Shown here: positions 1 to 50,856 of the stretch, in pieces
Layout of the letters: each line of letters starts with the position of its first letter
Numbering within the stretch: the first letter of the stretch is position 1
IMG/VR virus record: IMGVR_UViG_3300027782_000027
Location: 1-64,000 of that record
Strand: one strand, 5' to 3'
DNA length: 64,000 bases
Position numbers and translations under genes: made by a program
Notes under the pieces: model-generated
What the model was told of the DNA's origin: nothing
Seen by the model: the letters and a program-made list of their open reading frames with translations, nothing else
Databases searched by the model: none

Positions 1-6
1 TAAGTA

Positions 7-381
7 GTGATGATGTTTTATTGGACAAGGCAGTTTAAATCGGGACACTATCCACCTAATGTATTAGAAAAAATATGGGTAATGGCAACACCTTTTTTCG
101 CAACTGCTGATTATACACCTGTTGAAGTTGATTGGTATGGATTAGAAGATGACTCAAAGAAACCTAATGTAGGAATATACGATACAAGTGGTGATGGTGA
201 TTATTTTGTGGAACTTACACATAATACACACAATGGTAACTATTTTTTTAATAGTGTTGATAATTTATTTGATTGGTATAATACGTTTTATTTACCAGGA
301 GTTTATGAAATAATCATGAATGATTTTATATCTGAAGTCCAACAAGACACAGATGAGAGACTTAGAGATAAAAATACTTAA
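7..381 (+). CDS. hypothetical protein (start uncertain, window edge)
   Basis: 124-aa ORF followed by hairpins and a terminator. Confidence 0.55.
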   Translation: MMMFYWTRQFKSGHYPPNVLEKIWVMATPFFATADYTPVEVDWYGLEDDSKKPNVGIYDTSGDGDYFVELTHNTHNGNYFFNSVDNLFDWYNTFYLPGVYEIIMNDFISEVQQDTDERLRDKNT

Positions 382-419
382 GATACGGACTTAGGACCGT
401 TGTAGTTTAGGCTACATTA

Positions 420-451
420 ACCCCATTGAATTCGCTACTCAGTGGGGTTTT
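420..451 (+). terminator. intrinsic terminator
   Basis: ACCCCATTGA...TCAGTGGGGT stem followed by T run, between convergent genes. Confidence 0.7.
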
Positions 452-1235
452 CATTTAAGACATCTTCTACCACTGGTGAATTACATGTACGCGATGTGTG
501 TGTTGTAGTTACCTTATGATTTAGGACTTCTCCCACCTCACTGGGAACAATAGTGGGTCTACAATTGGTTTTAGTTACCTTATGATTTAATACCTTCTCC
601 ACCATATTCGGAAACGGCGGTGTATTGAATGATATTGTAGATACCTTATGATTTAATACATCTTCCACCTTTATTTCCAACTGAAAACAAGAATGACCTG
701 TTGTAGATACCTTATGATTTAATACATCTTCTACCTTATGTCCAACCCATCCATCATACCCATCAGTTGTAGATACCTTATGATTTAATACATCTTCCAC
801 CAAGAAACCTTCGTTACCGATATCGTTTTGCGTTGTGGATACCTTATGATTTAATACCTCTTCCATCTTCACACTTGCCTTCATGCCCATGTAAACAGTT
901 GTAGATACCTTATGATTTAATACCTCTTCCACCCCGCCTGTAATCATGGTCTGCGCCATGGCAGTTGTGGACACCTTATGATTTAATACCTCTTCCACCC
1001 AAGAAGCAAGTATTGGTTCAAAATCTTTGGGTTCCAATGAGAAAATAGTAAAAAAACTATTAAAGAAATAATATCTCCACCACAAACGACCACTCTTTTC
1101 AAATTCAAAATACCAATGTTCCTTTTCTCGGTCAATTAACCATATAGAATCTTTATATGGGATTATCTCCGTATTACCTAATTCTTTGTATAGTTGTTTG
1201 AATACGACCTGTTTTAATCTATCAGTTACTTTCAT
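435..1235 (-). CDS. repeat-array protein 1: N-terminal domain of about 80 aa plus (VEEVLNHKVSTT + unique 10 aa) x8
   Basis: ORF translation; paralog of 1222-1899, 1883-2521 and 9657-10385. Confidence 0.85.
   Translation of the reverse strand: MKVTDRLKQVVFKQLYKELGNTEIIPYKDSIWLIDREKEHWYFEFEKSGRLWWRYYFFNSFFTIFSLEPKDFEPILASWVEEVLNHKVSTTAMAQTMITGGVEEVLNHKVSTTVYMGMKASVKMEEVLNHKVSTTQNDIGNEGFLVEDVLNHKVSTTDGYDGWVGHKVEDVLNHKVSTTGHSCFQLEIKVEDVLNHKVSTISFNTPPFPNMVEKVLNHKVTKTNCRPTIVPSEVGEVLNHKVTTTHTSRTCNSPVVEDVLNENPTE
502..999. CRISPR. CRISPR-like array 1, in frame inside a CDS; 8 full 36-nt repeats plus a degenerate one ending at 471; 30-nt spacers
   Basis: Consensus GTTGTRGATACCTTATGATTTAATACMTCTTCCACC at 502, 568, 634, 700, 766, 832, 898, 964; exact 66-nt period; no cas genes in the window. 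Confidence 0.55.
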
Positions 1236-1899
1236 TTTCTTTTTTGTTGTTTAATACCTCATCTACCGATTCCGCTCTTCTTGAGATGTATTCTTCCGTT
1301 TTGGATACCTTACGATTCAATATATCTTCCACCAAAAAGTTTCCTTCACCTACGTCACGGACTGTTTTGGATACCTTACGATTCAATACCTGTTCCACCG
1401 CAATGGTTACAGTTCCTGCCTTTCCTGCAGTTGTGGATACCTTACTATTCAATACCTCTTCCATCATATCATTCGAAGTGAAACTGAATTGCTGAGTTGT
1501 GGATACCTTACTATTCAATACCTCTTCCACCCCTTGCTTAAAACTTCTGAAACGGCTTGCAGTTGTGGATACCTTACTATTCAATACCTCTTCCACCCCG
1601 CCATCCATGACATATTGAGTGCTGTCAGTTGTGGATACCTTACTATTCAATACCTCTTCCACCCAAGATGAAATAATTGGTTCAAAATCTTTGGACTCCA
1701 AAGAGAAAAAAGAAAAGAAAGATTTGAAATAATCATATCTCCAATATAAACATCCACTTTCAGTTAGTTGGAAATACCAGTATTTTTCTTCTCTATCAAT
1801 AAACCAATAACTGTATTGGGTAGGGATAATTTCCACATTACCTAATTCTTTGTATAGTTGTTTGAATACAACCTGTTTTAATCTATCCGTTACTTTCAT
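1222..1899 (-). CDS. repeat-array protein 2 (6 unique 10-aa cassettes)
   Basis: ORF translation; repeats VEEVLNSKVSTT. Confidence 0.85.
   Translation of the reverse strand: MKVTDRLKQVVFKQLYKELGNVEIIPTQYSYWFIDREEKYWYFQLTESGCLYWRYDYFKSFFSFFSLESKDFEPIISSWVEEVLNSKVSTTDSTQYVMDGGVEEVLNSKVSTTASRFRSFKQGVEEVLNSKVSTTQQFSFTSNDMMEEVLNSKVSTTAGKAGTVTIAVEQVLNRKVSKTVRDVGEGNFLVEDILNRKVSKTEEYISRRAESVDEVLNNKKENESN
1298..1663. CRISPR. CRISPR-like array 2, in frame; 6 full repeats plus a degenerate one ending at 1267
   Basis: GTTGTGGATACCTTACTATTCAATACCTCTTCCACC-type repeats at 1298, 1364, 1430, 1496, 1562, 1628; 30-nt unique spacers. Confidence 0.55.
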
Positions 1900-2521
1900 T
1901 TTCTTTTTTATTGTTTAATGCCTTTTTCACCCAAGCACTATTTAATACTTCTTCCACTGACCTTTCGGAAAACAAGGAATTATTTTTAGTTGTTGATACC
2001 CTACTATCTAATACTTTTTTTACCTTTCTTTTTTGGGCGGCGTCTACTTCAAAAGTTTCGGATACCTTATGATTTAAGACCTCTTCCACCCACTTTGCTG
2101 TTACAGTAGTTTTCTCTTCAGTTGTGGATACCTTATGATTTAATACCTCTTCCACCAGAGGAAATTCGTCAATTACAAACATTTTTGTTGTGGATACCTT
2201 ATGATTTAATACCTCTTCCACCTTTCGCGAGAAGTAACCGAGCTTATTGCCTGTCGTGGATACCTTATGATTTAATACCTCTTCCACCCAAGAAGATATT
2301 ATTGGTTCAAACTCACTCTGTTCCAAAGAAAAAATGCTGAAAAACGATGGGAAGAATGAGTATCTCCAAAATAAACATCCATCTTTAGACAACTGAAAAT
2401 ACCAATAACAATTTTCCCTATCAATGAACCATACAGAGTCTTTATACGGGATTATCTCCACATTACCTAACTCTTTGTATAGGTGTTTGAATATGAGTTG
2501 TTTTAGCTTATCTGTAACCAT
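1883..2521 (-). CDS. repeat-array protein 3 (5 unique cassettes); start moved to ATG at 2521
   Basis: ORF translation; TATCTTTG element just upstream of the ATG; start matches paralogs. Confidence 0.85.
   Translation of the reverse strand: MVTDKLKQLIFKHLYKELGNVEIIPYKDSVWFIDRENCYWYFQLSKDGCLFWRYSFFPSFFSIFSLEQSEFEPIISSWVEEVLNHKVSTTGNKLGYFSRKVEEVLNHKVSTTKMFVIDEFPLVEEVLNHKVSTTEEKTTVTAKWVEEVLNHKVSETFEVDAAQKRKVKKVLDSRVSTTKNNSLFSERSVEEVLNSAWVKKALNNKKENESNG
1989..2288. CRISPR. CRISPR-like array 3, in frame; 5 repeats plus a degenerate one ending at 1958
   Basis: Repeats at 1989, 2055, 2121, 2187, 2253; 66-nt period. Confidence 0.55.
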
Positions 2522-2546
2522 AAGCACAAAGATAATAAAAAATTAC

Positions 2547-3086
2547 TTAATAAACAGGTCCTGATTTGAATTTTTTACATACAGGTATATTAGCTGTGGT
2601 TTTAAACTCTCTTGGAATTGCTTCACGTATTTTACCCCATTTATTATACGTATAAACATATTTGTCAATATCATTATATAAATCACCTTTAAATTTATAA
2701 TATGAGTTTACAAATTGACAAAAATCTTTGGCGGTTGAGATAGTTTTTATTGCTGGAGTTATTAAATCTTCTGAAGATGTTGTTTGAATATCTTTTTTTA
2801 CTTGATTTGCAGCATAATTTCCATCCCAAGCGTATGTGTCGGCTTTTGAATCATATCTACACCAATTAAATGAATTTACAACAATTTCATAGTCTTCAAA
2901 TCTTTCTTCACAAAGCCTAATACTTTCAGTCCCCGAATCAGGAAGGCTTGCTCCAAGTGATAATCCCATATCATTGAGACTCCCTATTAGGTTACCTGCT
3001 GGTACTCCCCCAATAGTTTGTTCTTTTATTACACGTTTTATTAAATTAATTAATTCAGATTCGGTTAGTCTAATTTTTTTACTCAT
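2547..3086 (-). CDS. hypothetical protein with KKIRLTESEL leader
   Basis: N-terminal leader shared with about 10 other ORFs. Confidence 0.75.
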   Translation of the reverse strand: MSKKIRLTESELINLIKRVIKEQTIGGVPAGNLIGSLNDMGLSLGASLPDSGTESIRLCEERFEDYEIVVNSFNWCRYDSKADTYAWDGNYAANQVKKDIQTTSSEDLITPAIKTISTAKDFCQFVNSYYKFKGDLYNDIDKYVYTYNKWGKIREAIPREFKTTANIPVCKKFKSGPVY

Positions 3087-3112
3087 TTTGTTTTTTTTAT
3101 ATAAATATATTA

Positions 3113-3451
3113 TTAATTTTCAGACGGTAATTTTAACGACCATTGGGAGCTCATTATCTTGTTGGACATTTGACCCTCCAAATTTAGTTTATTCTTAACC
3201 CATTGCCCAACAATTCTGGTGGATTGATAACTGTTAAGAGAAAAGAAGGAAGAAATGGCTTCAATTAAACCTTTATAGATAAAACACAATTCATTATTGG
3301 AATGATTACCACCATATTGAATTTGAGCTGACTCATCTTCAGGATATGAAAAATATATACTGGCACCAGTTTTAGTTATAATGAAATCCTGACTATCAAG
3401 ATACCTGAATATTACTTTATCTAATTGTGATTCTGTGATTAAATATTTCAT
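3113..3451 (-). CDS. MKYLITE-family small protein
   Basis: MKYLITESQLDKVIFRYLD...FFSL...WV paralog family. Confidence 0.8.
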   Translation of the reverse strand: MKYLITESQLDKVIFRYLDSQDFIITKTGASIYFSYPEDESAQIQYGGNHSNNELCFIYKGLIEAISSFFSLNSYQSTRIVGQWVKNKLNLEGQMSNKIMSSQWSLKLPSEN

Positions 3452-3819
3452 GATAATGTTATACTTCTAACTGATTTAACCTCATAGTCAGGAAAGAACT
3501 CATTAAATACATCTGACATAATGAATTTGCCGTGAACTAACCAAATGGGATGAGGAAACGCTGTACCATATATATCGTCAAAGTTCCTATTATAGTATAA
3601 ATCGCCACTTGGTTTATTATAAACCATTACAGCGTTTTGGTCACTATCAAATAAGTTAAGTCTTAAATCATTTTCATCATATGAATTAACCAAATTTGCA
3701 AAATAAGGAACCAATTTAGGTTTCAGTCTTTCGTATTGTTCCGTATATTCAGAATCTCTCCAAGTTCTTTCAAGTTCAGATATTAATTTATGTTGTGACT
3801 CGGTAATAATATACTTCAT
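3448..3819 (-). CDS. MKYIITE-leader small protein
   Basis: shared leader; upstream TATTTAT motif. Confidence 0.8.
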   Translation of the reverse strand: MKYIITESQHKLISELERTWRDSEYTEQYERLKPKLVPYFANLVNSYDENDLRLNLFDSDQNAVMVYNKPSGDLYYNRNFDDIYGTAFPHPIWLVHGKFIMSDVFNEFFPDYEVKSVRSITLS

Positions 3820-3851
3820 GTAATAATAAATATAATTATATTTATTATATT

Positions 3852-4175
3852 ATGAACCTACAAGAGAATATAAAAAAAGTATTAAGGGAAGAAACAGATT
3901 TTTCACCACAGTTCAAAAGAAGACTGAATAGATTTAAATCGTTTGTATGGGATAACAATGTAACTAATTATCCATGTGATTTTGAAAACTTTGAAGCGTT
4001 CATGCGTGGTATACAACATGAAATTATGGACATGATTACAGATGGTTCTGATACCGATGGTCCATTGTCTGAGTGGTTAAAATATAAAGATGGTGTTACG
4101 TATGTAGAAAACTACATGAGGGATGACTTAGAAAAGTTTTATAATAAAGAATGTGTTGATGTCTTATACGTATAA
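3852..4175 (+). CDS. MNLQENIKKVLREE-leader small protein
   Basis: leader shared with 5643 and 9201. Confidence 0.8.
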   Translation: MNLQENIKKVLREETDFSPQFKRRLNRFKSFVWDNNVTNYPCDFENFEAFMRGIQHEIMDMITDGSDTDGPLSEWLKYKDGVTYVENYMRDDLEKFYNKECVDVLYV

Positions 4176-4520
4176 ATCAAGAAATTGTTCCACTGTTATT
4201 CCAAGACCTGAGATACCAAATAAATTCATAAATTCAGATTCATCATATCTATCACATCCGTTATTGATAATCCAAGGAATATCTGTAACATAATTCATCT
4301 GATAAAGTATATCATAACTATTATCTAATTTTATAAGATACATCGGACCATAGTTATCCATACTAAGTCTTCTTCGTAAACCATCATCAGTAATACAGTT
4401 ATCAAAAGACATCATTACATCAATCAAATCTGGGTCAATCTCCACACGACCCGTAAGGTCAATATTAAATTTGTCTTTAATTAATGTTTTTAATTTTGAT
4501 TCAGTGATTAAGTATTTCAT
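4164..4520 (-). CDS. MKYLITE-leader small protein
   Basis: shared leader. Confidence 0.8.
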   Translation of the reverse strand: MKYLITESKLKTLIKDKFNIDLTGRVEIDPDLIDVMMSFDNCITDDGLRRRLSMDNYGPMYLIKLDNSYDILYQMNYVTDIPWIINNGCDRYDESEFMNLFGISGLGITVEQFLDLYV

Positions 4521-4536
4521 TATATATAAATATTAG

Positions 4537-4947
4537 TTAACAGTTACCTGTATTATAAACCTCAATATTGTGACCTCTAATTAGACCTCCACCGAACTGA
4601 TATAAAGCCTTAGCAATAGTATCTCTATACACACTCCTATTACCTTCTTCATACATATACCTCCCCACATTTTCAGGTTCCGGCTTAGGTATGTAGACAA
4701 CCAAATCCATAGAGTTACGAGTGGGGATGATATTATAACTACAATATCTTAAGACGGTTGAAATATCATTTTCAAATATAGTTTTTGTTAGAAAGATAAT
4801 ATCTTCTCTTTTTCCTTCAAGACCAATCTCATCAATAATATCTTCAGGTTCCTTATCAGTCATTTTACACAGAGTACGCATACCAAATTTCTCTAATAAG
4901 GGTTTAAGAGTTTTGCTATATTGATTCTCAGTGATTAAGTATTTCAT
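4537..4947 (-). CDS. MKYLITE-leader small protein
   Basis: shared leader. Confidence 0.8.
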   Translation of the reverse strand: MKYLITENQYSKTLKPLLEKFGMRTLCKMTDKEPEDIIDEIGLEGKREDIIFLTKTIFENDISTVLRYCSYNIIPTRNSMDLVVYIPKPEPENVGRYMYEEGNRSVYRDTIAKALYQFGGGLIRGHNIEVYNTGNC

Positions 4948-4955
4948 ATATTATA

Positions 4956-5285
4956 TTAGTTATTTACTCTTATCCATACATTCGGTGCGGGTTTAGCCCC
5001 ACGGACTTGTACAACTATTACTTTGAGGGTATTTTCAACCCATCTACGGATAAGTTCCATGGAATCGGAGATACCCAAAGAAAAGAAAGAGGCCACTTCA
5101 TTAATTAAACTATTAACAATGTAACACCAGCCACTAATTTTATCATATCTAATCTCAGCGTATTCATCATCTTCTAAATTAACTAAAAATATAGTTGCAC
5201 CCTTTTTAATCTGAATAAAGTTCTTAATATCCAAATATCTAAAGATTACTCTGTCTAATTGTGATTCGGTGATAAGGTATTTCAT
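4956..5285 (-). CDS. MKYLITE-family small protein
   Basis: close paralog of 8520-8816. Confidence 0.8.
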   Translation of the reverse strand: MKYLITESQLDRVIFRYLDIKNFIQIKKGATIFLVNLEDDEYAEIRYDKISGWCYIVNSLINEVASFFSLGISDSMELIRRWVENTLKVIVVQVRGAKPAPNVWIRVNN

Positions 5286-5288
5286 ATA

Positions 5289-5609
5289 TTAATATTCAAA
5301 AAACATAACATCAACATCAAATACTTTACTAAACCAATCAGAAATGAATTTACCTGATTGCTCTTTATCAAGTGGATACATGGATGAAAACTTATCTAAA
5401 AAAGATTCATCAATAAATAATCTACCATCACTATGGTCAAACTCCATTAAAATAAAAAAATCAGGGCCTCTTTCCTGGCTATATATATTAATGAAATCAC
5501 TATCTGATGTTCTATCATAATCTAATATATTATTTAACTCAGATATCATTAAATTATTTATTACCGATTTGGCTTTATCTAATTGTGATTCGGTGATAAG
5601 ATATTTCAT
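5289..5609 (-). CDS. MKYLITE-leader small protein (start moved to 5609)
   Basis: shared leader begins at codon 8 of the track ORF. Confidence 0.8.
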   Translation of the reverse strand: MKYLITESQLDKAKSVINNLMISELNNILDYDRTSDSDFINIYSQERGPDFFILMEFDHSDGRLFIDESFLDKFSSMYPLDKEQSGKFISDWFSKVFDVDVMFFEY

Positions 5610-5642
5610 ATAGAATATAAATATAATCATATTTATAATAAT

Positions 5643-5972
5643 ATGGACTTAAAAGAATCTATAAAAAGAATACTGAGGGAAGAACTATCGGCGAGAATTA
5701 AAAGAAGACTTTCTAATGATGAAATGGAAAATGAGTTTCTTGAATCTTTTGAAGGTGCTTATCGTCTTACAAAAGACAGAAAGGTTTTAAGTTCACATTT
5801 TTTAGATGAGTTAGTCTACACAACAATAACCTTTATGATGGATGGGGTACATTGGAGATTTGTTAGCACATTACCTGAAGATGAATTTTGGTATGATGAT
5901 ATACACCAAGGGTTAGAAAATCATTATAGAAAAAGAATTACACGGATGTATAATGAAAGAAAAGGTTTTTAA
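5643..5972 (+). CDS. MDLKESIKRILREE-leader small protein
   Basis: shared leader; similar to 3852-4175. Confidence 0.8.
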   Translation: MDLKESIKRILREELSARIKRRLSNDEMENEFLESFEGAYRLTKDRKVLSSHFLDELVYTTITFMMDGVHWRFVSTLPEDEFWYDDIHQGLENHYRKRITRMYNERKGF

Positions 5973-5975
5973 AGA

Positions 5976-6254
5976 TTAATTAGAGTTTAAGAATTTAAGT
6001 AACGCTCCAATATATTTGGAACGTTTATCATAGAATTCAGTATCATCATCATATTGAAAAAACTCTTCACCTCTATGTCTATCAATGAACTTTTCAATTA
6101 ATTCATAAGCGTAATCATCTCTGTCGGCGGAATCTTCAAAATCTTCTTCATCCATAATGTAGTTATAATCATCCCTAAGTGCTTCCAATTCATCCATTGT
6201 AAACCTCCTAAGTAAAAATACTTCTAACTGTGATTCTGTAATTAAGTATTTCAT
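5976..6254 (-). CDS. MKYLITE-leader acidic small protein
   Basis: shared leader. Confidence 0.8.
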   Translation of the reverse strand: MKYLITESQLEVFLLRRFTMDELEALRDDYNYIMDEEDFEDSADRDDYAYELIEKFIDRHRGEEFFQYDDDTEFYDKRSKYIGALLKFLNSN

Positions 6255-6267
6255 TATTCGTTAACCA

Positions 6268-6621
6268 TTAATCTGTAACTATTAATCTGTAATCATATGG
6301 ACCATCCCAAATCGTACTATTACTAATACCCAAAGTATTATTAACCCATTCTTTGATTATATCCAAACAATCCGATTTACCAATGGGTAATAAGGTAGAT
6401 AAATCCTCAGTCAAACTACGATTTACAAACACCCAATTCCTAACTTCACCAAAGGCGTTGTTAACATAAACACTAATCTGTGATTGACTATCTGACTCAC
6501 TGTTTAAGAAATATATATAATTGTTGAATCTCTTCTTGTTGTCATATATCACAAAGTCCTGAATATCAAGATACTTAAAGATTACTTTCTCTAATTTTGA
6601 TTCGGTGATAAGGTATTTCAT
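6268..6621 (-). CDS. MKYLITE-family small protein
   Basis: paralog family motif. Confidence 0.8.
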   Translation of the reverse strand: MKYLITESKLEKVIFKYLDIQDFVIYDNKKRFNNYIYFLNSESDSQSQISVYVNNAFGEVRNWVFVNRSLTEDLSTLLPIGKSDCLDIIKEWVNNTLGISNSTIWDGPYDYRLIVTD

Positions 6622-6633
6622 TATATATAAATA

Positions 6634-7002
6634 TTAGTTAAGGGGTATTCCCAATAACGAATGAATAAGGATGTCTTTGTTAGACGGTATTTTTAACCAA
6701 GACTGGGACATCAAAGTAGCCTTGGTGGTATTTGTAACCTTCATTTGTAGGGTATTCCCAACCCACCTACCAATAGCTGATTTAGAATCAGATTCGTCCA
6801 AAGAAAATAACGATGAGATGTTCTTGATTAATTCGGGACTTATTACACAACCAAAATTACCATTTTTGATTTGAGCATATTCATCATCTTCAGAGTTAAC
6901 GAAGTATACTAAAAGACCTATTTTAATTTGAATAAAATCTTGATGGTTCAAGTAAATAAAGATTGCTCTATCTAATTGTGATTCTGTAATTAAGTATTTC
7001 AT
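6634..7002 (-). CDS. MKYLITE-family small protein (start moved to 7002)
   Basis: leader begins at codon 15 of the track ORF. Confidence 0.8.
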   Translation of the reverse strand: MKYLITESQLDRAIFIYLNHQDFIQIKIGLLVYFVNSEDDEYAQIKNGNFGCVISPELIKNISSLFSLDESDSKSAIGRWVGNTLQMKVTNTTKATLMSQSWLKIPSNKDILIHSLLGIPLN

Positions 7003-7109
7003 TATATATAAATACAAAGATACACATAAAACTGAACAATACATATTGGGTTAATAATTTAATAAGAATAAGATAATATGGTTTGAGGTCGTTTTTAATA
7101 CTTATTATT

Positions 7110-7817
7110 ATGGATTTATCAAAGTTTTTAACCATAGTAATCCCTTGTAAGAACGAGGGCAAGATAATTGAACAAACGTTGTCCTTATTAAACTTTCAAA
7201 AGGGAATACAAGATGTTAGAGTTATTGTTTGTGATTCATCGGATGATGATTATACATCCTATTCTTTGGAAAATAGGAGAACAGATTATTTTAATCTACA
7301 GATTATTTCAGGAGGACTTCCGTCTGTTGCAAGAAATAAGGGAGCAGAGAATGTGGAAACACCTTATGTTCTATTTTTGGATGCTGACATATTCTTATTG
7401 GATTTTGACATATTAAACAATTGTATATGGGAGTTCTTATTACATAATACAGATTTGATTACATGTAAGGTAAGGTCAACGACAGGTGAGTATAATAGTA
7501 TATTCAGATTGTTTGACACCATACAAAAGGTATTTAAACCAATCACGCCATTTTGTCTTGGTGGGTTTATGATGGTTAAGAAAGAAGTATATGATACAAT
7601 CGGCGGGTTTGATGAAAACGCAAGAGTTGCTGAGGATTATCTATTCTCCAAACAAGTTAAACCAAGTAAGTTTTATATCATGAATACAACAGTATTCACA
7701 AGTCCAAGAAGGTTCAAACAGAAAGGTGTGTGGTATATGTTAAAACTTATGGTTAGTTCATTCTTCAACAGGAACAATAAAAATCATTTTGAGGATGATA
7801 AAGGATACTGGGAATGA
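7110..7817 (+). CDS. glycosyltransferase family 2
   Basis: IVIPCKNE, ARNKGA, LFLDAD (DxD) and GGFDE...ED motifs. Confidence 0.9.
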   Translation: MDLSKFLTIVIPCKNEGKIIEQTLSLLNFQKGIQDVRVIVCDSSDDDYTSYSLENRRTDYFNLQIISGGLPSVARNKGAENVETPYVLFLDADIFLLDFDILNNCIWEFLLHNTDLITCKVRSTTGEYNSIFRLFDTIQKVFKPITPFCLGGFMMVKKEVYDTIGGFDENARVAEDYLFSKQVKPSKFYIMNTTVFTSPRRFKQKGVWYMLKLMVSSFFNRNNKNHFEDDKGYWE

Positions 7818-8527
7818 ATAATTGGAAAACGATAATCATGAGTGACTTACACTTAGGAGCGAGACAATCACAGACAGATAAGATAATAAGTTTCTTGGAT
7901 AATAACACAACGGAAAAACTAATACTGAACGGTGATATAATAGATGGTTGGGCTCTCAAAGGTAATGGTAAATGGACAAAGGATTGTACCAAGATATTCA
8001 GGAAGTTCATGAAGATGTCCGAGAAGAATACAAAGGTAATTTATATAAGAGGAAACCATGATGACTTCTTAAAAGATTTTATTCCATTTAAATTAAACAA
8101 CATCAGGATTGTAAGGAAGTATGTTCATACAGGGATAGATAATAGAAAGTATTTTTGTTTTCACGGAGATGTATTGGATTTTGTTATAATGGAAGCAAGA
8201 TGGCTTGCAGTAATCGGTGGATGGTCATATGATATTGTCATTAAGTTTAATACTCTATATAACAAAATAAGAAAGTGGTTTAACTTACCATATCATTCAT
8301 TAGCTAACACAATAAAACAATCTGTAAAAGGGGCGATTAACTTTGTATCTGATTTTGAGGATAACGCGAAAGGTTTAACAAAACAAAAGGGATATGATGT
8401 TGCGGTGTGTGGACATATTCATCACCCGAAGATAGAGAATGACTATATGAACTCAGGAGACTTTTGTGAGAACTCTACATGTCTTGTAGAAGATTACAAT
8501 GGGGTGTGGAAAATAATTACTATCTAA
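7814..8527 (+). CDS. UDP-2,3-diacylglucosamine hydrolase-like (LpxH family) metallophosphoesterase
   Basis: SDLHLG, GDIID, GNHD, HGD, GHIH, NSGDF calcineurin-like motifs; translationally coupled to the GT2 gene. Confidence 0.85.
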   Translation: MNNWKTIIMSDLHLGARQSQTDKIISFLDNNTTEKLILNGDIIDGWALKGNGKWTKDCTKIFRKFMKMSEKNTKVIYIRGNHDDFLKDFIPFKLNNIRIVRKYVHTGIDNRKYFCFHGDVLDFVIMEARWLAVIGGWSYDIVIKFNTLYNKIRKWFNLPYHSLANTIKQSVKGAINFVSDFEDNAKGLTKQKGYDVAVCGHIHHPKIENDYMNSGDFCENSTCLVEDYNGVWKIITI

Positions 8528-8816
8528 CTATAACTTCTTTAACTCTTCTATCCAAAGTATTCTCAACCCATCTAGCAATAACATATTTAGAATTATCAAA
8601 TTCTATAGAGAAGAAATCTTTAATCTCATCAATTAACCCAAAAATTATTACACACTCACCACCTCTAAAGTATTCGATTGATGAGTCGATATATTCACCA
8701 CCTTCAGAATTGGCGAAGTAAATTGCACTCCCTCTTTTAATCTGAATAAAGTTCTTAATATCCAAATATCTAAAGATTACTCTATCTAATTGTGATTCTG
8801 TTATAAGGTATTTCAT
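8520..8816 (-). CDS. MKYLITE-family small protein
   Basis: paralog family motif. Confidence 0.8.
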   Translation of the reverse strand: MKYLITESQLDRVIFRYLDIKNFIQIKRGSAIYFANSEGGEYIDSSIEYFRGGECVIIFGLIDEIKDFFSIEFDNSKYVIARWVENTLDRRVKEVIVR

Positions 8817-8832
8817 TATATATAAATATTAG

Positions 8833-9168
8833 TTAGAAGGGTAACCTCAATGTCAAACTTCCACTGTTTGTAATGGACATTGATTTTTCGTAACTGTATT
8901 TTACTTGTAATGTATCACCAATCCATCGAACAATAATCTTCTCAGAATCAGAATCACTCAAAGAAAATAATGATGAAATATCGTCAACTAATTCATAATT
9001 CATAAAAGAAAAATTATCACTCATATCGTATCTGATTTGACAATACTTATCACCTTCTGAATTAACAAAGTATATAGTGTCTTTATCCTCAACCTGAATA
9101 AAATCTTGATTGTCAAGATACCTAAAGATTACTTTTTCTAATTTAGATTCTGTGATAAGATATTTCAT
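8833..9168 (-). CDS. MKYLITE-family small protein
   Basis: paralog family motif. Confidence 0.8.
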   Translation of the reverse strand: MKYLITESKLEKVIFRYLDNQDFIQVEDKDTIYFVNSEGDKYCQIRYDMSDNFSFMNYELVDDISSLFSLSDSDSEKIIVRWIGDTLQVKYSYEKSMSITNSGSLTLRLPF

Positions 9169-9200
9169 ATGATAATAAATATAATTATATTTATAATATT

Positions 9201-9656
9201 ATGAACCTACAACAAAACATAAAAAGAATATTAAGGGAAGAATACACCGTAAAACAGATGAAGTTATTAACTATCGCAAGTCAGGTGGGGTTACTAAAGA
9301 CAGGAGAAATGTTCGGTGGTATAGAATACCTTATAAATGTGTTAGGTGATGAGTTCCTTACAACAAACAATAAGGTTAAGATTATTAGGGAAGTAGTAGA
9401 AACAACCGATTATGAATATATCACACTAATGGATATGAATGAAAACCCAATAGTTCTCAAGGTTGGAGACGGTAAACTTTCACAAATAGAAATGATAAAT
9501 AAAGAAGATGTTACAGTGTTCCATTATGGTGGATATGAATACTCACAAGATTTAGGTGAAAGTTATATATCTTATGAAGAACTACCAAAAGATGTATTAG
9601 ATGATATCTTTAATATGGTATTAGATTTCTATACAGATACTTTAGAGAATAAGTAA
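9201..9656 (+). CDS. MNLQQNIKRILREE-leader protein
   Basis: shared leader. Confidence 0.8.
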   Translation: MNLQQNIKRILREEYTVKQMKLLTIASQVGLLKTGEMFGGIEYLINVLGDEFLTTNNKVKIIREVVETTDYEYITLMDMNENPIVLKVGDGKLSQIEMINKEDVTVFHYGGYEYSQDLGESYISYEELPKDVLDDIFNMVLDFYTDTLENK

Positions 9657-10385
9657 TTATTGATTTAAGACCTGTTCCATCACATAATTCATTACAGACA
9701 TTTCTACATCCGTTGTACATACCTTATTATTTAATACCTCTTCCACTCCTCTTGTGAAAGGTCCAGAATATGCTTCCATTGTAGATACCTTATGATTTAA
9801 TACCTCTTCTACCTCAATTCTTCCAACGTAATCAAGTGAATCGGTTGTGGATACCTTATGATTTAAGACCTCTTCCACCAATGAATGTTCGGGGTATTTG
9901 AGAATGGTAGTTGTAGACACCTTAACATTATGACTTAATACATCTTCCACCTTCCAAGGAACACGAACTTTAACATCGCACGTTGTGGATACCTTATGAT
10001 TTAATACATCTTCCACCATCATGCTTTCAACACCGCTACCTGTCACGGTTGTGGATACCTTATGATTTAAGACCTCTTCCACCACGTAGTTCCTAAGCCC
10101 TATAGGGCGATATGTTGCGGATACCTTATGATTTAAGACCTCTTCCACCCAAGAAGATAGAACAGGACAAAAATCATCCGAACTCATGGAGAATATTTGA
10201 AAAAACGAATTAAAAAAATCGTATCTCCACCATAAAGTACCTGACTCATCAAGTTCAAAGTACCAATGTTTATTATCCCTATTAATGAACCATATAGACC
10301 CATTATAAGGAATAATCTCACAATCACCTAACTCTCTATATAGGTGTTTAAAAATAATTTGTTTTAATCTATCTGTAATAACCAT
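9657..10385 (-). CDS. repeat-array protein 4 (7 unique cassettes)
   Basis: paralog of 435-1235; TATATTTG element just upstream of the ATG. Confidence 0.85.
   Translation of the reverse strand: MVITDRLKQIIFKHLYRELGDCEIIPYNGSIWFINRDNKHWYFELDESGTLWWRYDFFNSFFQIFSMSSDDFCPVLSSWVEEVLNHKVSATYRPIGLRNYVVEEVLNHKVSTTVTGSGVESMMVEDVLNHKVSTTCDVKVRVPWKVEDVLSHNVKVSTTTILKYPEHSLVEEVLNHKVSTTDSLDYVGRIEVEEVLNHKVSTMEAYSGPFTRGVEEVLNNKVCTTDVEMSVMNYVMEQVLNQ
9712..10149. CRISPR. CRISPR-like array 4, in frame; 7 repeats (one with a 6-nt insertion) plus a degenerate one ending at 9681
   Basis: Repeats at 9712, 9778, 9844, 9910 (42 nt), 9982, 10048, 10114; all spacers 30 nt. Confidence 0.55.
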
Positions 10386-11198
10386 AGAGCAAATATAGTA
10401 AGAAATTATGAACTAAACAAACTCATTCCCCCATTCCACTATCGTGTCGTTCCATTCCCCTAGCGGGTCATTACACTAATGGGTTCATTCATTTGTTTAC
10501 TTCTTAATTTCCCCTATTGTATGAATCTATAATTAACGTACAACACTAATCTATAATAATCCCCCATAATGAAAGACATATAGTATGAGGGGACATAACA
10601 TATTACTGTTAATGGTATTGTACCCATCGGGATAATGAAATACCCTAAAGGGTATATAATATGATATGAGTATACCTGTTAGGGTATAAAATATATGGTG
10701 GAATGTGAAGGGGACAATGTCCTTTATAGGGAACATAACCCTACAGGGTTATCCCTTATATAACACATTATGTCCCACTTTTTACCACCACTATAATTGT
10801 CCATATCATGTGTCTATATGGTAAGGGGAAATCTTAAAAACCTCATTATATTCGGGTCAAGAACCCCGTTGAAGACACTATAAAATACACTTTTCGTTGA
10901 AGGATTTAAACAACTAAAGTCTGTCCACGCCACTTTATTGTTACATCCTATTTTTAGCTGGAAAATGTATATAGTTAAAAAAACCCTTCTCACACTATCA
11001 GGAGGACCACTTTTTTCACTTTTCATATAACCAAAAACCCCTCTCACATATATGTCAGTGGTAAAAAGTGGGAAATAAAAACTTAACATAAACTATACAT
11101 TATACCATATATTTATTATGATTATTAGGTCTAAAAGTGGTCAAGGGGATTATCCCCCATCTGACACTCAACTGACATTTTGACAAAATCAAGAAAAA

Positions 11199-11495
11199 AT
11201 GAATAATAATTTATCAACAATTCCCCCTGACGATATGTCTAACCCCATTTCCATACCTGACATACTGAAGAATGTGAGGGTTGTAACTGACCCTTTACGG
11301 GATGTTGTTGCGGTGACCCTATATTATAATGGGGAAAAGGTGGGTAAGATGGAGTATAGGAAAGCTTCATCTACATACCAAGGAGACATGAAGATATTAA
11401 CATTGTATTCACTGACCCCTGAGTTCATGGAGTTATTCAAGGGACAGGAAAACCCAATTAGGATTTTAGACAACCATATTAAAGTGTTTGTTTAA
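11199..11495 (+). CDS. hypothetical protein
   Basis: 98-aa ORF. Confidence 0.5.
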   Translation: MNNNLSTIPPDDMSNPISIPDILKNVRVVTDPLRDVVAVTLYYNGEKVGKMEYRKASSTYQGDMKILTLYSLTPEFMELFKGQENPIRILDNHIKVFV

Positions 11496-14823: not shown

Positions 14824-15066
14824 ATGGAAGAAGAGAAATTATCAGTTACTGTGGATGTAACATTAAAGGACAATAAGTTTTTTTATAACATAATGGCCAT
14901 GAAGGGTATGAATATGGATGATATTATGTCTGTATTGTGTGGAGGTCTTGCTTTATCTATTCGTAGTAGGGAAACCCCTGAGTTACAGGGTCAGACTCTT
15001 AGGGATATTATTGGTCATTTGGAATCTGAGTTTATTAATGTGGATTCATTTTCTGACGTTAAATAA
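14824..15066 (+). CDS. hypothetical protein
   Basis: 80-aa ORF. Confidence 0.7.
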   Translation: MEEEKLSVTVDVTLKDNKFFYNIMAMKGMNMDDIMSVLCGGLALSIRSRETPELQGQTLRDIIGHLESEFINVDSFSDVK

Positions 15067-15115
15067 TTTTTTGGAAAATTAAGATTATTGTTTTATCTTT
15101 GTAAAAAAAATATAT

Positions 15116-20894: not shown

Positions 20895-21677
20895 ATGAGA
20901 AACATAGAACAATATAGAAAAAGATTTTTTAATTTAATGGAATCAACCATTGGTGATGTTAAACCATTGATTAATGAAATTTTCGAGACGGATACAAATG
21001 GAACTTTAAACTATCCTGATGGTACATACACCGGAGACTATCATGCTAAACCTTTCAATCAACCTGTACGACGTGGTTATGGAATTATGAAATGGAATAA
21101 TGGTAATATATACACCGGTAATTGGGGTAATAATACGATGGATGGTTATGGAACTTTTATATATGCTAATGGTCAAAAATATATAGGGGATTTTAAAGAA
21201 GGGACTTTCAGTGGTTATGGAAGTATGACATGGCCTGATGGTCAAAAATATGTGGGATATTTCGAAAATGATTATGCCAATGGTTATGGTTCTTATACAG
21301 AAAAAAACGGAACTATTTACAAGGGAATGTGGAAAGACTTTGAGTTAGTAAATCCTGACATTGTTGAAAGTGAAGTATCGAGTACTGAATGTAATACTTT
21401 AAAGGCGGAAGCCGATAAACAAACATTATATAATCCGACTAATCTTAGTTCAGGTAAATTATCTATTGGTTTAAAAAATCAAGGACCTCTTGTAAAATAT
21501 GTTCAGTGTTTATTAAATGGAAAAAACAAAGAATTAAGTCTTGGTCTAACTGACCTTACAGTTGATGGTATTTTTGGAAATAATACAAAGAAAATGGTTA
21601 GAAAATTTCAAGAAAAGACTGGAGGATTAGGTAATGATGGTGTCGTTGGTAAAAATACATTTTTGAAATTGGTTTAA
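20895..21677 (+). CDS. MORN-repeat protein with C-terminal peptidoglycan-binding domain
   Basis: Y.G.(F/W)....(D/N)GYG repeats; VKYVQ.LL...VDGIFG..T...V..FQ...DGVVG..T (PG_binding_1-like). Confidence 0.85.
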   Translation: MRNIEQYRKRFFNLMESTIGDVKPLINEIFETDTNGTLNYPDGTYTGDYHAKPFNQPVRRGYGIMKWNNGNIYTGNWGNNTMDGYGTFIYANGQKYIGDFKEGTFSGYGSMTWPDGQKYVGYFENDYANGYGSYTEKNGTIYKGMWKDFELVNPDIVESEVSSTECNTLKAEADKQTLYNPTNLSSGKLSIGLKNQGPLVKYVQCLLNGKNKELSLGLTDLTVDGIFGNNTKKMVRKFQEKTGGLGNDGVVGKNTFLKLV

Positions 21678-27885: not shown

Positions 27886-28710
27886 TTATACTGTTACTTC
27901 TTGTTGTAGTAGTTCGTAAGCTCTTGATAAACGAGTCATTCCTATTCCACCACCAAATCGTGGGAAGAAATCGTGTGATAAAAACTCTTCCAATTCTTTT
28001 TCTACTCTTTCTTTTCCGAATAATTCAAAAAGTTTTTCAGAGTATTTTCCATTTTCTATTGTGTAGAAGTTATTTCTCATTTCTTCTACGTTAGAACTTC
28101 TTTCAGCAGAACCGATAGTCTCTTGTCCGTAAAGAATTACATCAACTTTGTTGAATATTTTGTTTTTACCTTCTCTCATGTTCCAAAAAGGATTTGTTCT
28201 GTAAGGAAAGTTTTGTAGAGACACTACTGGTCCTTTTTCTTCCCACATTTTTGTCTCGTGTTCGTTCTCTAAAATGGATACTCCACCATATTCTTCACAA
28301 ACATCGTCGTAGTTAACTTCTACCTCACTATCAAATCCAAGATAGTCTAAAAGTTCTGATTCAAGTTTTAACATTTCTTTCATTCCACCTTTTGATTCAA
28401 ACTCAAACATTGGAAAAATCATTTCATGACGACCTGGGATTGGGTCTTTTTCTTGTCTATACGACGTTGAAATACAATATACACCATTCCATTCAGGATT
28501 TTTAAGAAGTTCGTATTCTAACCACATTTGACCTGTCTGTGGTAGTGGCCACACTTCTCCTTGATAATTAAATGTTGTTATTGAGTGTGGATTTTCACAC
28601 GCTGCCAAGATTGACAATCTTGATTGGGTTGGAACTTCTTTAAAACCTTTGTTTTGGAAGAATGTTCTCATTTTTTGAACTAACTCGTTGTAAGTTTCTG
28701 TGTTTTTCAT
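27886..28710 (-). CDS. class IIb aminoacyl-tRNA synthetase-like catalytic domain without anticodon domain (AsnRS-like; possible archaeal-type asparagine synthetase)
   Basis: motif 1 FFQNKGFKEVPT, motif 2 SYRQE...RH..IF.MFEFE, motif 3 FGGGIGMTRL; only 274 aa. Confidence 0.8.
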   Translation of the reverse strand: MKNTETYNELVQKMRTFFQNKGFKEVPTQSRLSILAACENPHSITTFNYQGEVWPLPQTGQMWLEYELLKNPEWNGVYCISTSYRQEKDPIPGRHEMIFPMFEFESKGGMKEMLKLESELLDYLGFDSEVEVNYDDVCEEYGGVSILENEHETKMWEEKGPVVSLQNFPYRTNPFWNMREGKNKIFNKVDVILYGQETIGSAERSSNVEEMRNNFYTIENGKYSEKLFELFGKERVEKELEEFLSHDFFPRFGGGIGMTRLSRAYELLQQEVTV

Positions 28711-47204: not shown

Positions 47205-47278
47205 GCCTTCGTAGCTCAGTAGGATAGAGCAACAGATTTCTAATCTGTGGGCCAGGGGTTCGAATCCCTTCGGGGGTA
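47205..47278 (+). tRNA. tRNA-Arg (anticodon TCT)
   Basis: GCCTTCG acceptor, TAGCTCAG..GGATAGAGC D arm, ACAGA-TTTCTAA-TCTGT anticodon arm, GGTTCGAATCC T arm; CCA not encoded; promoter and terminator flank it. Confidence 0.93.
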
Positions 47279-47284
47279 CTATTT

Positions 47285-50463: not shown

Positions 50464-50856
50464 TGGTGGAGGTGCTGGGTTTCGAACCCAGGTCCAAAAA
50501 TGTTTACGATAAAACACTACACGTTTAGGTCATTGTTTTTCTAAACAATCCGAAACTTCACAATTCCCTTATTTTATAGTGGTTCGGTTTACTGAGAACT
50601 AATCCTCCACTTTGTTCCTTTTCGGATAGAAACCACACCACGGTACGAGCTTCTGTTTCAAGGCGTATGCTTACCGGCCCATTGTATACTAATCTTAGAT
50701 TAGGCTACAGATACTTCTTCAGTACGGATTAAACCGAGTGTAGAAAGTTTTGCAATTGTGTTGCCGTTTGTTTTTTAAACCAGTTTTACAGGGTTAGTTT
50801 AGCCCCGACGTGCGTTTTATAATAAATTCATTCCTGTCAAATCCAGAAACACCCCC
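50464..50856 (-). ncRNA. ssrA: tmRNA
   Basis: 5' GGGGGTGTTTCTGGATTTGACAGG; 3' CTGGGTTCGAAACCCAGCACCTCCACCA; tag ORF 50765-50700; TATCTTTG promoter upstream. Confidence 0.92.

What the first reader, a model, noticed from the sequence alone, without database searches (positions are those of the whole stretch)
670..2186. Spacers look foreign and several encode recognisable bacterial protein fragments in their native frame
Seen: array 1 spacers average about 43% GC (103/240 by hand count; one is 60%) against about 30% for the phage. By motif recall: AGKAGTVTIA (1400-1429) resembles SecA AG..G.VTIATNMAGRG; GHSCFQLEIK (670-699) resembles the N-terminal GHSCF of metallo-beta-lactamase-fold hydrolases; DGYDGWVGHK (736-765) resembles the SH3 DGYEGW of NlpC/P60 proteins; KMFVIDEFPL (2157-2186) resembles an ATPase Walker B. 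Inference: spacers come from host genes, kept in sense orientation and native frame, so the phage protein would display host-derived peptides. Antisense transcription would instead give guides complementary to host mRNAs.
Basis: partly seen in the sequence, partly recalled or inferred. Interest (0 to 1): 0.88.

Follow-up and report, generated by a model that had tools for sequence, protein, structure and literature searches.

The report
Host-DNA CRISPR-like arrays inside phage genes
Four small genes of a freshwater jumbo phage each end in a CRISPR-style array whose 30-base spacers are pieces of the host bacterium's chromosome, and every one of them is kept readable as protein, an arrangement I could not find described.

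Summary
The window starts a 240.8-kb jumbo phage record. It carries four arrays of a 36-nt repeat and 30-nt spacers (26 spacers). Spacer GC is 0.42 against 0.31-0.32 for the phage.

Each array lies wholly inside a minus-strand ORF. The ORF is an 88-aa N-domain followed by units of 12 constant and 10 variable residues. Across 83 distinct spacers from 40 arrays there are no stops in the coding frame. Each of the other five frames has stops in 22-51 spacers.

The spacers come from Flavobacteriales chromosomes. Nineteen have matches of 26-30 of 30 nt, three of them perfect, in ordinary genes such as secA, mutS and htpG. Orientation is random: 9 antisense, 4 sense out of frame, 6 native frame. Random capture followed by loss of stop-containing units predicts these shares.

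Arrays behave like CRISPR arrays. New units appear next to the N-domain, far-end units are shared, and far-end repeats decay.

No Cas1, Cas2, Cas4 or effector was found in the phage. Candidate hosts have II-C-like arrays with 30-nt spacers and the same repeat-end motif.

Best reading: a Cas1-Cas2-type reaction writes host DNA into a translated gene tail. What the tail does is unknown.

The parts
435..1235 (-). Array gene A (266 aa): N-domain (codons 1-88, about 972-1235), then 8 repeat-spacer units and a degenerate end
   Evidence: ORF list. Array mapped. AF2 gives N-domain pLDDT about 87 and tail below 40.
472..999 (-). Array 1: 8 repeats of 36 nt and 8 spacers of 30 nt, period 66. Repeat mismatches to consensus rise from 1 at the N-domain end to 6 at the far end.
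1222..1899 (-). Array gene B (225 aa). Array 2 is at 1268-1663 (6 units) plus a degenerate terminal repeat. Its stop overlaps the start of gene A.
1883..2521 (-). Array gene C (about 212 aa from the ATG at 2521). Array 3 is at 1959-2288 (5 units) plus degenerate repeats. Its stop overlaps the start of gene B.
9657..10385 (-). Array gene D (242 aa). Array 4 is at 9682-10149 (7 spacers). One old repeat carries a 6-nt insertion (VEDVLSHNVKVSTT).
1400..1429 (-). Spacer AGKAGTVTIA = host secA fragment, sense, native frame, 29/30 nt
670..699 (-). Spacer GHSCFQLEIK = 5' end of a host MBL-fold hydrolase gene, sense, native frame, 28/30 nt
868..897 (-). Spacer VYMGMKASVK = host Glu/Leu/Phe/Val dehydrogenase gene, sense, native frame, 29/30 nt
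1532..1561 (-). Spacer ASRFRSFKQG = 30/30 nt match inside a host response-regulator/PP2C gene, sense strand but out of frame
1466..1495 (-). Spacer QQFSFTSNDM = 29/30 nt, host DUF5916 gene, sense strand, out of frame
802..831 (-). Spacer QNDIGNEGFL = 28/30 nt, antisense to host htpG (Hsp90)
472..501 (-). Oldest spacer of array 1, HTSRTCNSPV = 28/30 nt, antisense to a host M28 peptidase gene. Matches in five genomes.
1268..1297 (-). Spacer EEYISRRAES = 27/30 nt, antisense to a host DUF349 gene
1598..1627 (-). Spacer DSTQYVMDGG = 26/30 nt, host NAD kinase gene, native frame
3113..9168 (-). Cluster of 10 or more small paralogs (MKYLITESQL...RWVENTL...). They are probably the parent family of the N-domain and carry no arrays.
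   Evidence: hhalign probability 55%, E 1e-4; WVEEVLNHKV aligns with WVENTLKVIV.

Best explanation
These are CRISPR-type arrays built into the 3' part of protein-coding phage genes.

Shown: the coding DNA of the last helix of a small phage protein (..SWVEEVLNHKVSTT) serves as the first repeat. The N-domain coding sequence upstream of it occupies the position of a leader. Units are added at that junction. Each unit is a new 36-bp repeat copy plus exactly 30 bp of DNA from the Flavobacteriales host chromosome, taken from either strand and with no detectable PAM. A unit is 66 bp, or 22 codons, so the frame is always kept. About a third of random host 30-mers would bring in a stop, and no such unit is seen. 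Every array is therefore read through as a 22-aa-periodic tail, which AlphaFold models with no confident structure (probably disordered). Units are also lost or exchanged by recombination between repeats, and old repeats decay.

Inferred: the insertion chemistry is that of a Cas1-Cas2 integrase, given the staggered cuts around the first repeat and the 30-bp ruler. The likeliest source is the host's type II-C adaptation module acting in trans. That module fills cas1-less 36-bp type VI-B arrays in Flavobacterium columnare. The host DNA fragments would arise during infection.

Inferred and weakest: the selected product is the translated tail. It may act as a multivalent string of the helix motif joined by arbitrary hydrophilic linkers, rather than through the identity of the host-derived peptides.
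For: Architecture: 36/30-nt period, and four arrays inside ORFs.

Open frame: 0 of 83 spacer clusters have a stop in the coding frame, against 22-51 with stops in each other frame. The pass rate of random host 30-mers is 0.655, so 0.655^83 is about 6e-16. Genes A and D are last in their units, so polarity on downstream genes cannot explain this.

Strict length: no true 30-nt exceptions in 238 spacer instances. The ten non-30 entries are nine 102-nt composites (spacer, decayed 42-nt repeat, spacer) and one array cut by the contig end. Host arrays vary between 29 and 31 nt.

Polarity: in 138 distinct arrays, 51% of the units next to the N-domain are singletons (mean sharing 3.0), against 14% at the C-terminal end (mean 9.9). 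Contig L216 carries the window's array 1 plus one extra unit at the N-domain end; it also differs at one internal unit. Repeat mismatches rise toward the far end.

Host origin: 19 protospacers at 26-30/30, three of them perfect, in SecA, MutS, HtpG, UppS, TonB-dependent receptors and others. Spacer GC 0.416 equals host coding GC 0.422. There are no self matches and no matches in isolate phages. The control query was clean.

Random strand and frame fit capture plus a stop filter.

Integrase inference: host-family arrays have 30-nt spacers and share the leader-distal repeat end GTTGTG[AG]AT in the same polarity. PMC8092290 reports in-trans filling of 36-bp VI-B arrays by II-C Cas1, a shared leader-distal GTTGT motif, and acquisition from the host genome.

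Protein side: the N-domain folds confidently and the tail does not. Leu and Ile are depleted and Asp, Glu, Gly, Asn and Gln enriched relative to random translation. Spacer variants are 16 synonymous to 19 non-synonymous, against 22.5% synonymous expected.

The family is large: 512 clusters at 50% identity. Lineages have their own repeat variants but always a 22-aa period.
Against: No integrase was identified. There is no Cas1, Cas2 or Cas4 Pfam match in the 82%-complete phage genome, and no Cas1 in five related partial genomes.

Only 14 of 151 genomes of the candidate host family show Cas1. Most genomes with the best protospacer matches do not, although these genomes are mostly or all MAGs of unknown completeness.

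The host II-C repeats are 46-47 nt, not 36. Apart from the end motif they are not significantly similar to the phage repeat (z 2.3 at best).

No PAM was found, whereas type II acquisition normally selects one.

No host array with this repeat exists in 185,579 species genomes. None with this repeat-end motif at a 66-nt period exists in 236 family genomes.

Translation is inferred from the absence of stops only. RNA-library contigs cover parts of the genes at low depth, carry no strand information, and DNA carry-over cannot be excluded.

The purifying-selection signal on the peptides rests on 35 substitutions and would weaken under a transition bias.
Confidence: 0.6

Rival explanations
1. The arrays are working guide-RNA arrays. 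The transcript is cut into crRNAs that load a Cas effector (host or phage) and direct it to the host chromosome or its transcripts, for host shut-off or nucleotide scavenging. Translation of the array is secondary, for instance to stabilise the RNA.
For: The 36-nt repeat, 30-nt spacer geometry and the GTTGT repeat end match Bacteroidota II-C and VI-B arrays. The spacers match host genes. The repeat has a weak 5-bp terminal stem. Huge phages with host-targeting spacers are known (own knowledge: Al-Shayeb et al. 2020).
Against: No effector was found. No large phage ORF has a Cas-like Pfam domain or even one HEPN-type RxxxxH motif. No anti-repeat copy exists on the opposite strand. The repeat does not match any host CRISPR repeat searched, so loading into a host Cas9 or Cas13b is unexplained. 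Guide function does not predict zero stops in 83 spacers. Random orientation wastes half the guides for RNA targeting. Source genes are a random sample, not a chosen set. There is no Rfam match.
Confidence: 0.17
2. The arrays are decoy integration sites. The phage offers a leader-repeat mimic that diverts the host adaptation complex, so the host array is not immunised. The inserted units are a tolerated by-product inside a gene that accepts in-frame insertions.
For: It rests on the same facts as the best explanation about where and how units are added. There are four copies per genome on a multicopy replicating phage. No phage cas genes were found.
Against: A pure decoy needs no open frame, yet the frame is always open. 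A decoy should collect phage-derived spacers too, and none was found. Most candidate host genomes lack a detectable Cas1.
Confidence: 0.12
3. One reading: spacers are host gene fragments kept in sense orientation and native frame, so the phage protein displays authentic host peptides (mimicry).
For: Six spacers are native-frame host peptides: SecA, MBL-fold hydrolase, Glu/Leu dehydrogenase, NAD kinase, MutS and one unnamed protein.
Against: 13 of 19 are antisense or out of frame. The native-frame share equals the expectation from the stop filter alone. The amino-acid make-up of 288 peptide clusters is close to random-DNA translation for Cys, His, Trp and Arg. Source proteins are mostly cytoplasmic or membrane housekeeping proteins, and the fragments come from arbitrary positions.
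Confidence: 0.03
4. These are ordinary protein tandem repeats that diverged by mutation, or an assembly artefact.
For: The 22-aa period lies inside an ORF. CRISPR finders are known to flag such repeats (own knowledge).
Against: The variable parts are unrelated to each other and match host chromosomes at up to 30/30 nt. The same arrays recur in more than 20 independent assemblies from different samples. Whole units come and go.
Confidence: 0.01

Closest known systems
Cas1-less type VI-B arrays of Flavobacterium filled in trans by the type II-C Cas1-Cas2 module (Hoikkala et al. 2021, PMC8092290)
   Same: 36-bp repeats and about 30-bp spacers. A leader-distal GTTGT repeat end shared with II-C repeats. 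No adaptation genes of its own. Spacers taken from dsDNA in both orientations, including from the host genome. Read from the leader into the array.
   Different: Here the array sits in a phage, with no cas13b or cas9 nearby. The 'leader' and first repeat are coding sequence. The whole array is kept as an open frame. No acquisition motif or PAM is seen. All traced spacers are host DNA.
Virus-borne CRISPR arrays and mini-arrays (own knowledge: Medvedeva et al. 2019; Al-Shayeb et al. 2020; ICP1 phage)
   Same: Repeat-spacer arrays carried by viruses, sometimes without adaptation genes, sometimes with spacers against host genes.
   Different: Those arrays are non-coding. They use repeats that match a host or phage Cas system and mostly target competing mobile elements or chosen host genes. 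Here the repeat matches no cellular array searched, the arrays are translated, and the sources are random chromosomal sites.
Phage crRNA-like anti-defence RNAs (Racr, own knowledge; Cracr/crlRNA: Liu et al., bioRxiv 10.1101/2024.10.29.618823)
   Same: Phage-encoded repeat units organised like arrays that interact with host Cas proteins.
   Different: Those mimic host repeats closely and carry designed partial matches to cas or toxin promoters. Here there is no host repeat match and no targeting logic, and there is a coding constraint.
Host-derived spacer acquisition provoked by Campylobacter phages that encode Cas4 (PMC4804229; abstract only)
   Same: Infection-linked capture of host chromosomal DNA as spacers in a type II-C context.
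   Different: There the spacers enter the bacterial array. Here they enter the phage genome, and no Cas4 was found.
Diversity-generating retroelements and other phage protein hypervariation systems (own knowledge)
   Same: A dedicated DNA-level process makes one part of a phage protein hypervariable.
   Different: DGRs mutate adenines of a fixed template through a reverse transcriptase. Here whole 22-codon cassettes of foreign DNA are appended.

Membership tests
CRISPR array (general definition) | Near-identical direct repeats of 23-55 nt separated by unique spacers of constant length | tested here: met
   36-nt repeat and 30-nt spacers in all 238 instances; the only non-30 entries are composites with a decayed repeat or an array cut by the contig end.
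CRISPR array (general definition) | Spacers are captured fragments of other DNA (protospacers exist) | tested here: met
   19 protospacers at 26-30/30 nt in Flavobacteriales chromosomes. The control query was clean.
CRISPR array (general definition) | Polarised growth at a leader end with duplication of the first repeat, and a degenerate terminal repeat | tested here: met
   Singleton share 51% at the N-domain end against 14% at the far end. An extra leader-end unit in L216. A gradient of repeat decay.
CRISPR array (general definition) | Cas1-Cas2 adaptation genes in the same genome or locus | tested here: not met
   No PF01867, PF09827 or PF01930 match in the phage record (82% complete), and no PF01867 match in five related partial records. 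A divergent or missing-part integrase cannot be excluded.
CRISPR array (general definition) | Non-coding locus transcribed and processed into crRNAs | tested here: inconclusive
   The arrays lie inside ORFs with no stops. Processing cannot be read from unstranded contigs of RNA libraries.
CRISPR array (general definition) | Protospacer-adjacent motif | tested here: not met
   No conserved position within 10 nt on either side of 18 protospacers. The sample is small.
Bacteroidota type II-C / VI-B array | 36-bp (VI-B) or 36-47-bp (II-C) repeat with a leader-distal GTTGT end, and about 30-bp spacers | tested here: met
   The phage repeat reads GTTGTGGAT... at the leader-distal end. Host-family II-C-like repeats read GTTGTGAAT... 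in the same polarity and have 30-nt spacers. The criterion comes from PMC8092290.
Bacteroidota type II-C / VI-B array | cas9 or cas13b effector encoded beside the array | tested here: not met
   The neighbours are small paralogous genes. No large ORF has a Cas-like domain or a HEPN motif.
Phage repeat mimics (Racr / crlRNA) | Repeat closely matches the CRISPR repeat of a host system | tested here: not met
   The repeat pattern is absent from 185,579 species genomes. No 66-nt-period array with this repeat-end motif in 236 family genomes.
Ordinary protein tandem repeat | All parts of the units are related by descent from one ancestral unit | tested here: not met
   The variable 30-nt parts form 83 unrelated clusters and match different host genes.

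The most novel reading that the evidence does not exclude
A phage has taken over CRISPR-style spacer integration as a way to write a protein. Captured host DNA is appended cassette by cassette to an open reading frame. The result is a heritable, polarised, hypervariable protein tail that also records past hosts, and the selected product is the polypeptide rather than a guide RNA. A still bolder variant is that the integrase is a phage-encoded enzyme unrelated to Cas1.
Probability: 0.35. Interest if true: 0.95.

Novelty: new variant of a known kind. Interest (0 to 1): 0.88.

Why it matters
CRISPR arrays are treated as non-coding memory banks of cells. Here the same repeat-spacer grammar sits in a virus, stores pieces of the host rather than of invaders, and is under selection to stay translatable.

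If the tail is the selected product, this is a new route to protein hypervariability: cassette accretion from foreign DNA. If the host adaptation complex does the writing, it is a natural case of Cas1-Cas2 acting on a non-CRISPR target in an invader's genome. That bears on how arrays originate and on how loosely leader-repeat recognition is enforced.

There is also a practical use. The spacers give a direct, sequence-based host assignment for uncultured jumbo phages, a kind of CRISPR host prediction in reverse. Here they point to Flavobacteriales from freshwater lakes. The ordered units are a chronological record of hosts met. The family is large (512 clusters at 50% identity), so the questions can be tested on existing lake time series.

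Tried and rejected
- Pfam and PHROG scans of the four array genes and their neighbours gave nothing meaningful.
- Foldseek of the AF2 model against the PDB gave no match with E below 0.5. The ESM Atlas returned only unnamed viral clusters.
- Rfam on 1-11000 gave no family.
- Spacers against the phage's own 240 kb and 19 related loci gave no protospacers.
- The array against 50,697 isolate phage genomes gave neither repeat nor spacer matches.
- One 60%-GC spacer against JGI metagenome contigs returned only other copies of the phage array. DGYDGWVGHK against IMG/VR returned nothing.
- Host CRISPR spacers (74, from three arrays) against the phage gave only short chance matches, so there is no reciprocal targeting in this sample.
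- Cas1, Cas2 and Cas4 family searches in the phage, and Pfam on 16 large ORFs, gave no cas genes. A crude HEPN motif scan found none.
- Gene context of two divergent family members showed Thg1-like, AAA_33, GT2 and metallophosphoesterase neighbours but no integrase.
- 'Relatives' of a virus record cannot be drawn by the genome tool.
- Literature searches with four term sets found no description of in-frame arrays.
- Ideas rejected: polarity or translational coupling as the reason for the open frame, because genes A and D end their units; an RNA origin of spacers, because the strands split 9:9; a DGR-type process, because the spacers are unrelated to each other.
Full report
WHAT IS THERE

The window is the first 64 kb of a 240,759-bp IMG/VR virus record, estimated 82% complete. 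The phage has a tail sheath, a baseplate J protein, a family B DNA polymerase, a ribonucleotide reductase and SprB-repeat proteins.

A 36-nt repeat alternates with 30-nt spacers at 472-999, 1268-1663, 1959-2288 and 9682-10149. On the + strand the repeat reads GTTGTGGATACCTTATGATTTAATACCTCTTCCACC. There are 26 spacers.

Array 1 has GC 103/240 and one spacer is 60% GC. All spacers together are 0.416, against 0.314 for the window.

THE ARRAYS ARE INSIDE GENES

Each array lies wholly within a minus-strand ORF: 435-1235, 1222-1899, 1883-2521 and 9657-10385.

Each ORF begins with an 88-aa domain that ends ..SWVEEVLNHKVSTT. It then continues as units of VEEVLNHKVSTT plus ten variable residues. The repeat is the coding DNA of the end of that domain.

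I collected 40 arrays from the window and from 19 IMG/VR loci that share the repeat. All 40 are covered end to end by an open frame.

Their 83 distinct spacer clusters have no stop in the coding frame. In each of the other five frames, 22 to 51 spacers contain stops. A random 30-mer of host coding DNA passes the stop test with probability 0.655. The chance of 83 passes is about 6e-16.

Genes A and D are followed by convergent genes. An effect on downstream genes therefore cannot be the reason for the open frame.

THEY EVOLVE LIKE CRISPR ARRAYS

Orthologous arrays share the units far from the N-domain and differ next to it. Whole 66-nt units are gained and lost.

Over 138 distinct arrays, including 120 proteins from a database search, 51% of the units in the first position are singletons, against 14% in the last position.

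A JGI contig (L216) carries the window's array 1 with one more unit, TLLGYYSNLL, inserted directly after the N-domain. It also differs from the window at one internal unit.

Repeat mismatches to the consensus rise from 0-1 near the N-domain to 5-10 at the far end. Repeat variants occur in blocks, for example three consecutive VEDVL copies. That is what successive copying of the first repeat would produce.

Spacer length is 30 nt in every true spacer. The host's own arrays vary from 29 to 31 nt. Lengths of 29 or 31 would break the frame here.

WHERE THE SPACERS COME FROM

There are no matches to the phage itself or to isolate phages.

The peptide AGKAGTVTIA, back-translated, hit more than 120 genomes, nearly all Bacteroidota. 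All hits inspected lie in SecA. Two genomes match the spacer at 29/30 nt.

One of those genomes is a Lake Mendota Flavobacteriales MAG (G001). It also matched other window spacers.

I searched its family (151, then 236 genomes) and scored five of its members in depth. This gave 19 spacer clusters with matches of 26-30/30, three of them perfect. Nine of the window's 26 spacers are among them.

A control of 7.5 kb of other phage DNA against the same five genomes gave no such hits.

The source genes are a random-looking set: secA, mutS, htpG, uppS, NAD kinase, Glu/Leu dehydrogenase, an MBL-fold hydrolase, an M28 peptidase, TonB-dependent receptors, transporters and DUF proteins. Host coding GC is 0.422, the same as the spacers.

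STRAND, FRAME AND PAM

Of the 18 protospacers found without prior choice, 9 are antisense, 4 are sense but out of frame and 5 are in the native frame.

Random capture followed by removal of stop-containing units predicts 48%, 27% and 24.5%. The data fit this.

No position within 10 nt on either side is conserved.

Inside the spacers, position 3 is A in 43 of 83 and position 30 is A or T in 62 of 83. This is unexplained.

WHO INSERTS THE UNITS

I found no Cas1, Cas2 or Cas4 in this genome and no Cas1 in five related partial genomes. There is no Cas-like domain or HEPN motif in the large ORFs. The repeat occurs in no cellular genome searched.

In the candidate host family, 14 of 151 genomes have Cas1. 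Their arrays have 46-47-nt repeats and 30-nt spacers. Read with the leader on the same side, the host repeat begins GTTGTGAAT and the phage repeat begins GTTGTGGAT.

Hoikkala et al. (PMC8092290) showed that in Flavobacterium columnare the II-C Cas1 fills a cas1-less VI-B array in trans. That array has 36-bp repeats. The leaders and repeats differ, the loci share the leader-distal GTTGT motif, and spacers also come from the host genome.

On this basis I take host II-C adaptation in trans as the most likely writer. I rate it below even odds, for three reasons: most matching host genomes show no Cas1, the repeat lengths differ, and no PAM is seen.

THE PRODUCT

AlphaFold2 models the N-domain with confidence as helix, four strands, two helices (pLDDT about 87). 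The tail is modelled with none (below 40). No fold, Pfam, PHROG or Atlas relative with a name was found.

The N-domain is probably a branch of the MKYLITESQ.. paralog family that fills 3113-9168.

The spacer-encoded peptides are close to random translation for Cys, His, Trp and Arg. They are poorer in Leu and Ile and richer in Asp, Glu, Gly, Asn and Gln. Their variants show 16 synonymous to 19 non-synonymous changes, against 22.5% synonymous expected. Together these are a weak sign of selection at the protein level.

RNA-library contigs cover pieces of the genes and arrays at low depth, with no strand information.

The family has 512 clusters at 50% identity. Lineages carry their own repeat variants, such as VEDVLNRKVVST, LESVLNCGVTTT and VEEVLKRGVSST. 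The period is always 22 aa.

VERDICT

Shown:
- CRISPR-type arrays sit in frame inside phage genes.
- The spacers come from the host chromosome.
- Units are added at one end.
- There is a strict open-frame constraint.

Inferred:
- A Cas1-Cas2-type integration, probably by the host II-C module.
- A functional translated tail.

Unknown: what the tail does.

Compared with known systems, this is closest to Bacteroidota VI-B and II-C arrays and to virus-borne arrays. It differs in being coding, in lacking cas genes, in having a repeat of its own and in sampling the host at random. Four literature searches found no description of such arrays.

LIMITS

- Hosts are inferred from MAGs.
- The phage genome is incomplete.
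- Only 19 protospacers support the strand, frame and PAM statistics.
- Protein-database entries cannot show stops by construction, so the stop test rests on the 40 DNA arrays.

Noticed in passing
window 3113-9168 (-): Ten or more paralogous small genes (95-136 aa) that start MKYLITES(Q/K)L and end ..RWVENTL... They are probably the parent family of the array genes' N-domain (hhalign probability 55%, E 1e-4). No known domain.
   Followed up: partly
window 3852-4175, 5643-5972, 9201-9656 (+): A second small paralog family that starts M(N/D)L(Q/K)E(N/S)IK(K/R)(V/I)LREE, interleaved with the first on the opposite strand.
   Followed up: no
window 7083-8527 (+); L221 4095-5529; L222 2350-3784: A GT2-type glycosyltransferase and a metallophosphoesterase-like gene sit among the paralogs. 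The window assignments are by eye from the translations; Pfam was not run on them. The same pair, annotated with Pfam there, lies near a divergent array gene in other contigs, together with Thg1-like and AAA_33 genes.
   Followed up: partly
window 15044-15110: A mostly intergenic stretch of about 65 nt that is 79% identical to a sequence present once in each of five Flavobacteriales genomes. It has no Rfam family and is unlike the 30-nt spacers. It could be a borrowed regulatory or small-RNA element.
   Followed up: partly
window 10386-11200: An ORF-poor region of about 800 bp upstream of array gene D, with several palindromes such as ATACCCTAAAGGGTAT and 21-34-nt inverted repeats.
   Followed up: no
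window 50464-50856 (-) and 47205-47279 (+): A phage-encoded tmRNA (tag AKLSTLGLIRTEEVSVA) and a tRNA-Arg(TCT).
   Followed up: no
window 62016-62470: Long imperfect 18-nt tandem repeats that would read as a Thr/Pro/Asn-rich linker, within the span of a long + strand ORF at 61842-63122 (translation not checked).
   Followed up: no
window 28908-30695, 27886-28710, 20895-21677: A PPK2 polyphosphate kinase fused to a phage lysozyme domain, a class II aminoacyl-tRNA-synthetase-like ORF, and a MORN-repeat plus peptidoglycan-binding ORF.
   Followed up: no
L175 7902-8718; L176 9622-12027; L178 9891-12476 (host-family genomes): II-C-like CRISPR arrays next to Cas1, with 46-47-nt repeats and 30-nt spacers. 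None of their 74 spacers matches this phage.
   Followed up: yes
L215/L216/L218 versus window 736-765: An internal unit differs between otherwise near-identical arrays (DGYDGWVGHK in the window, EYGFVENTTK in relatives). This points to recombination between arrays or to occasional internal insertion.
   Followed up: partly
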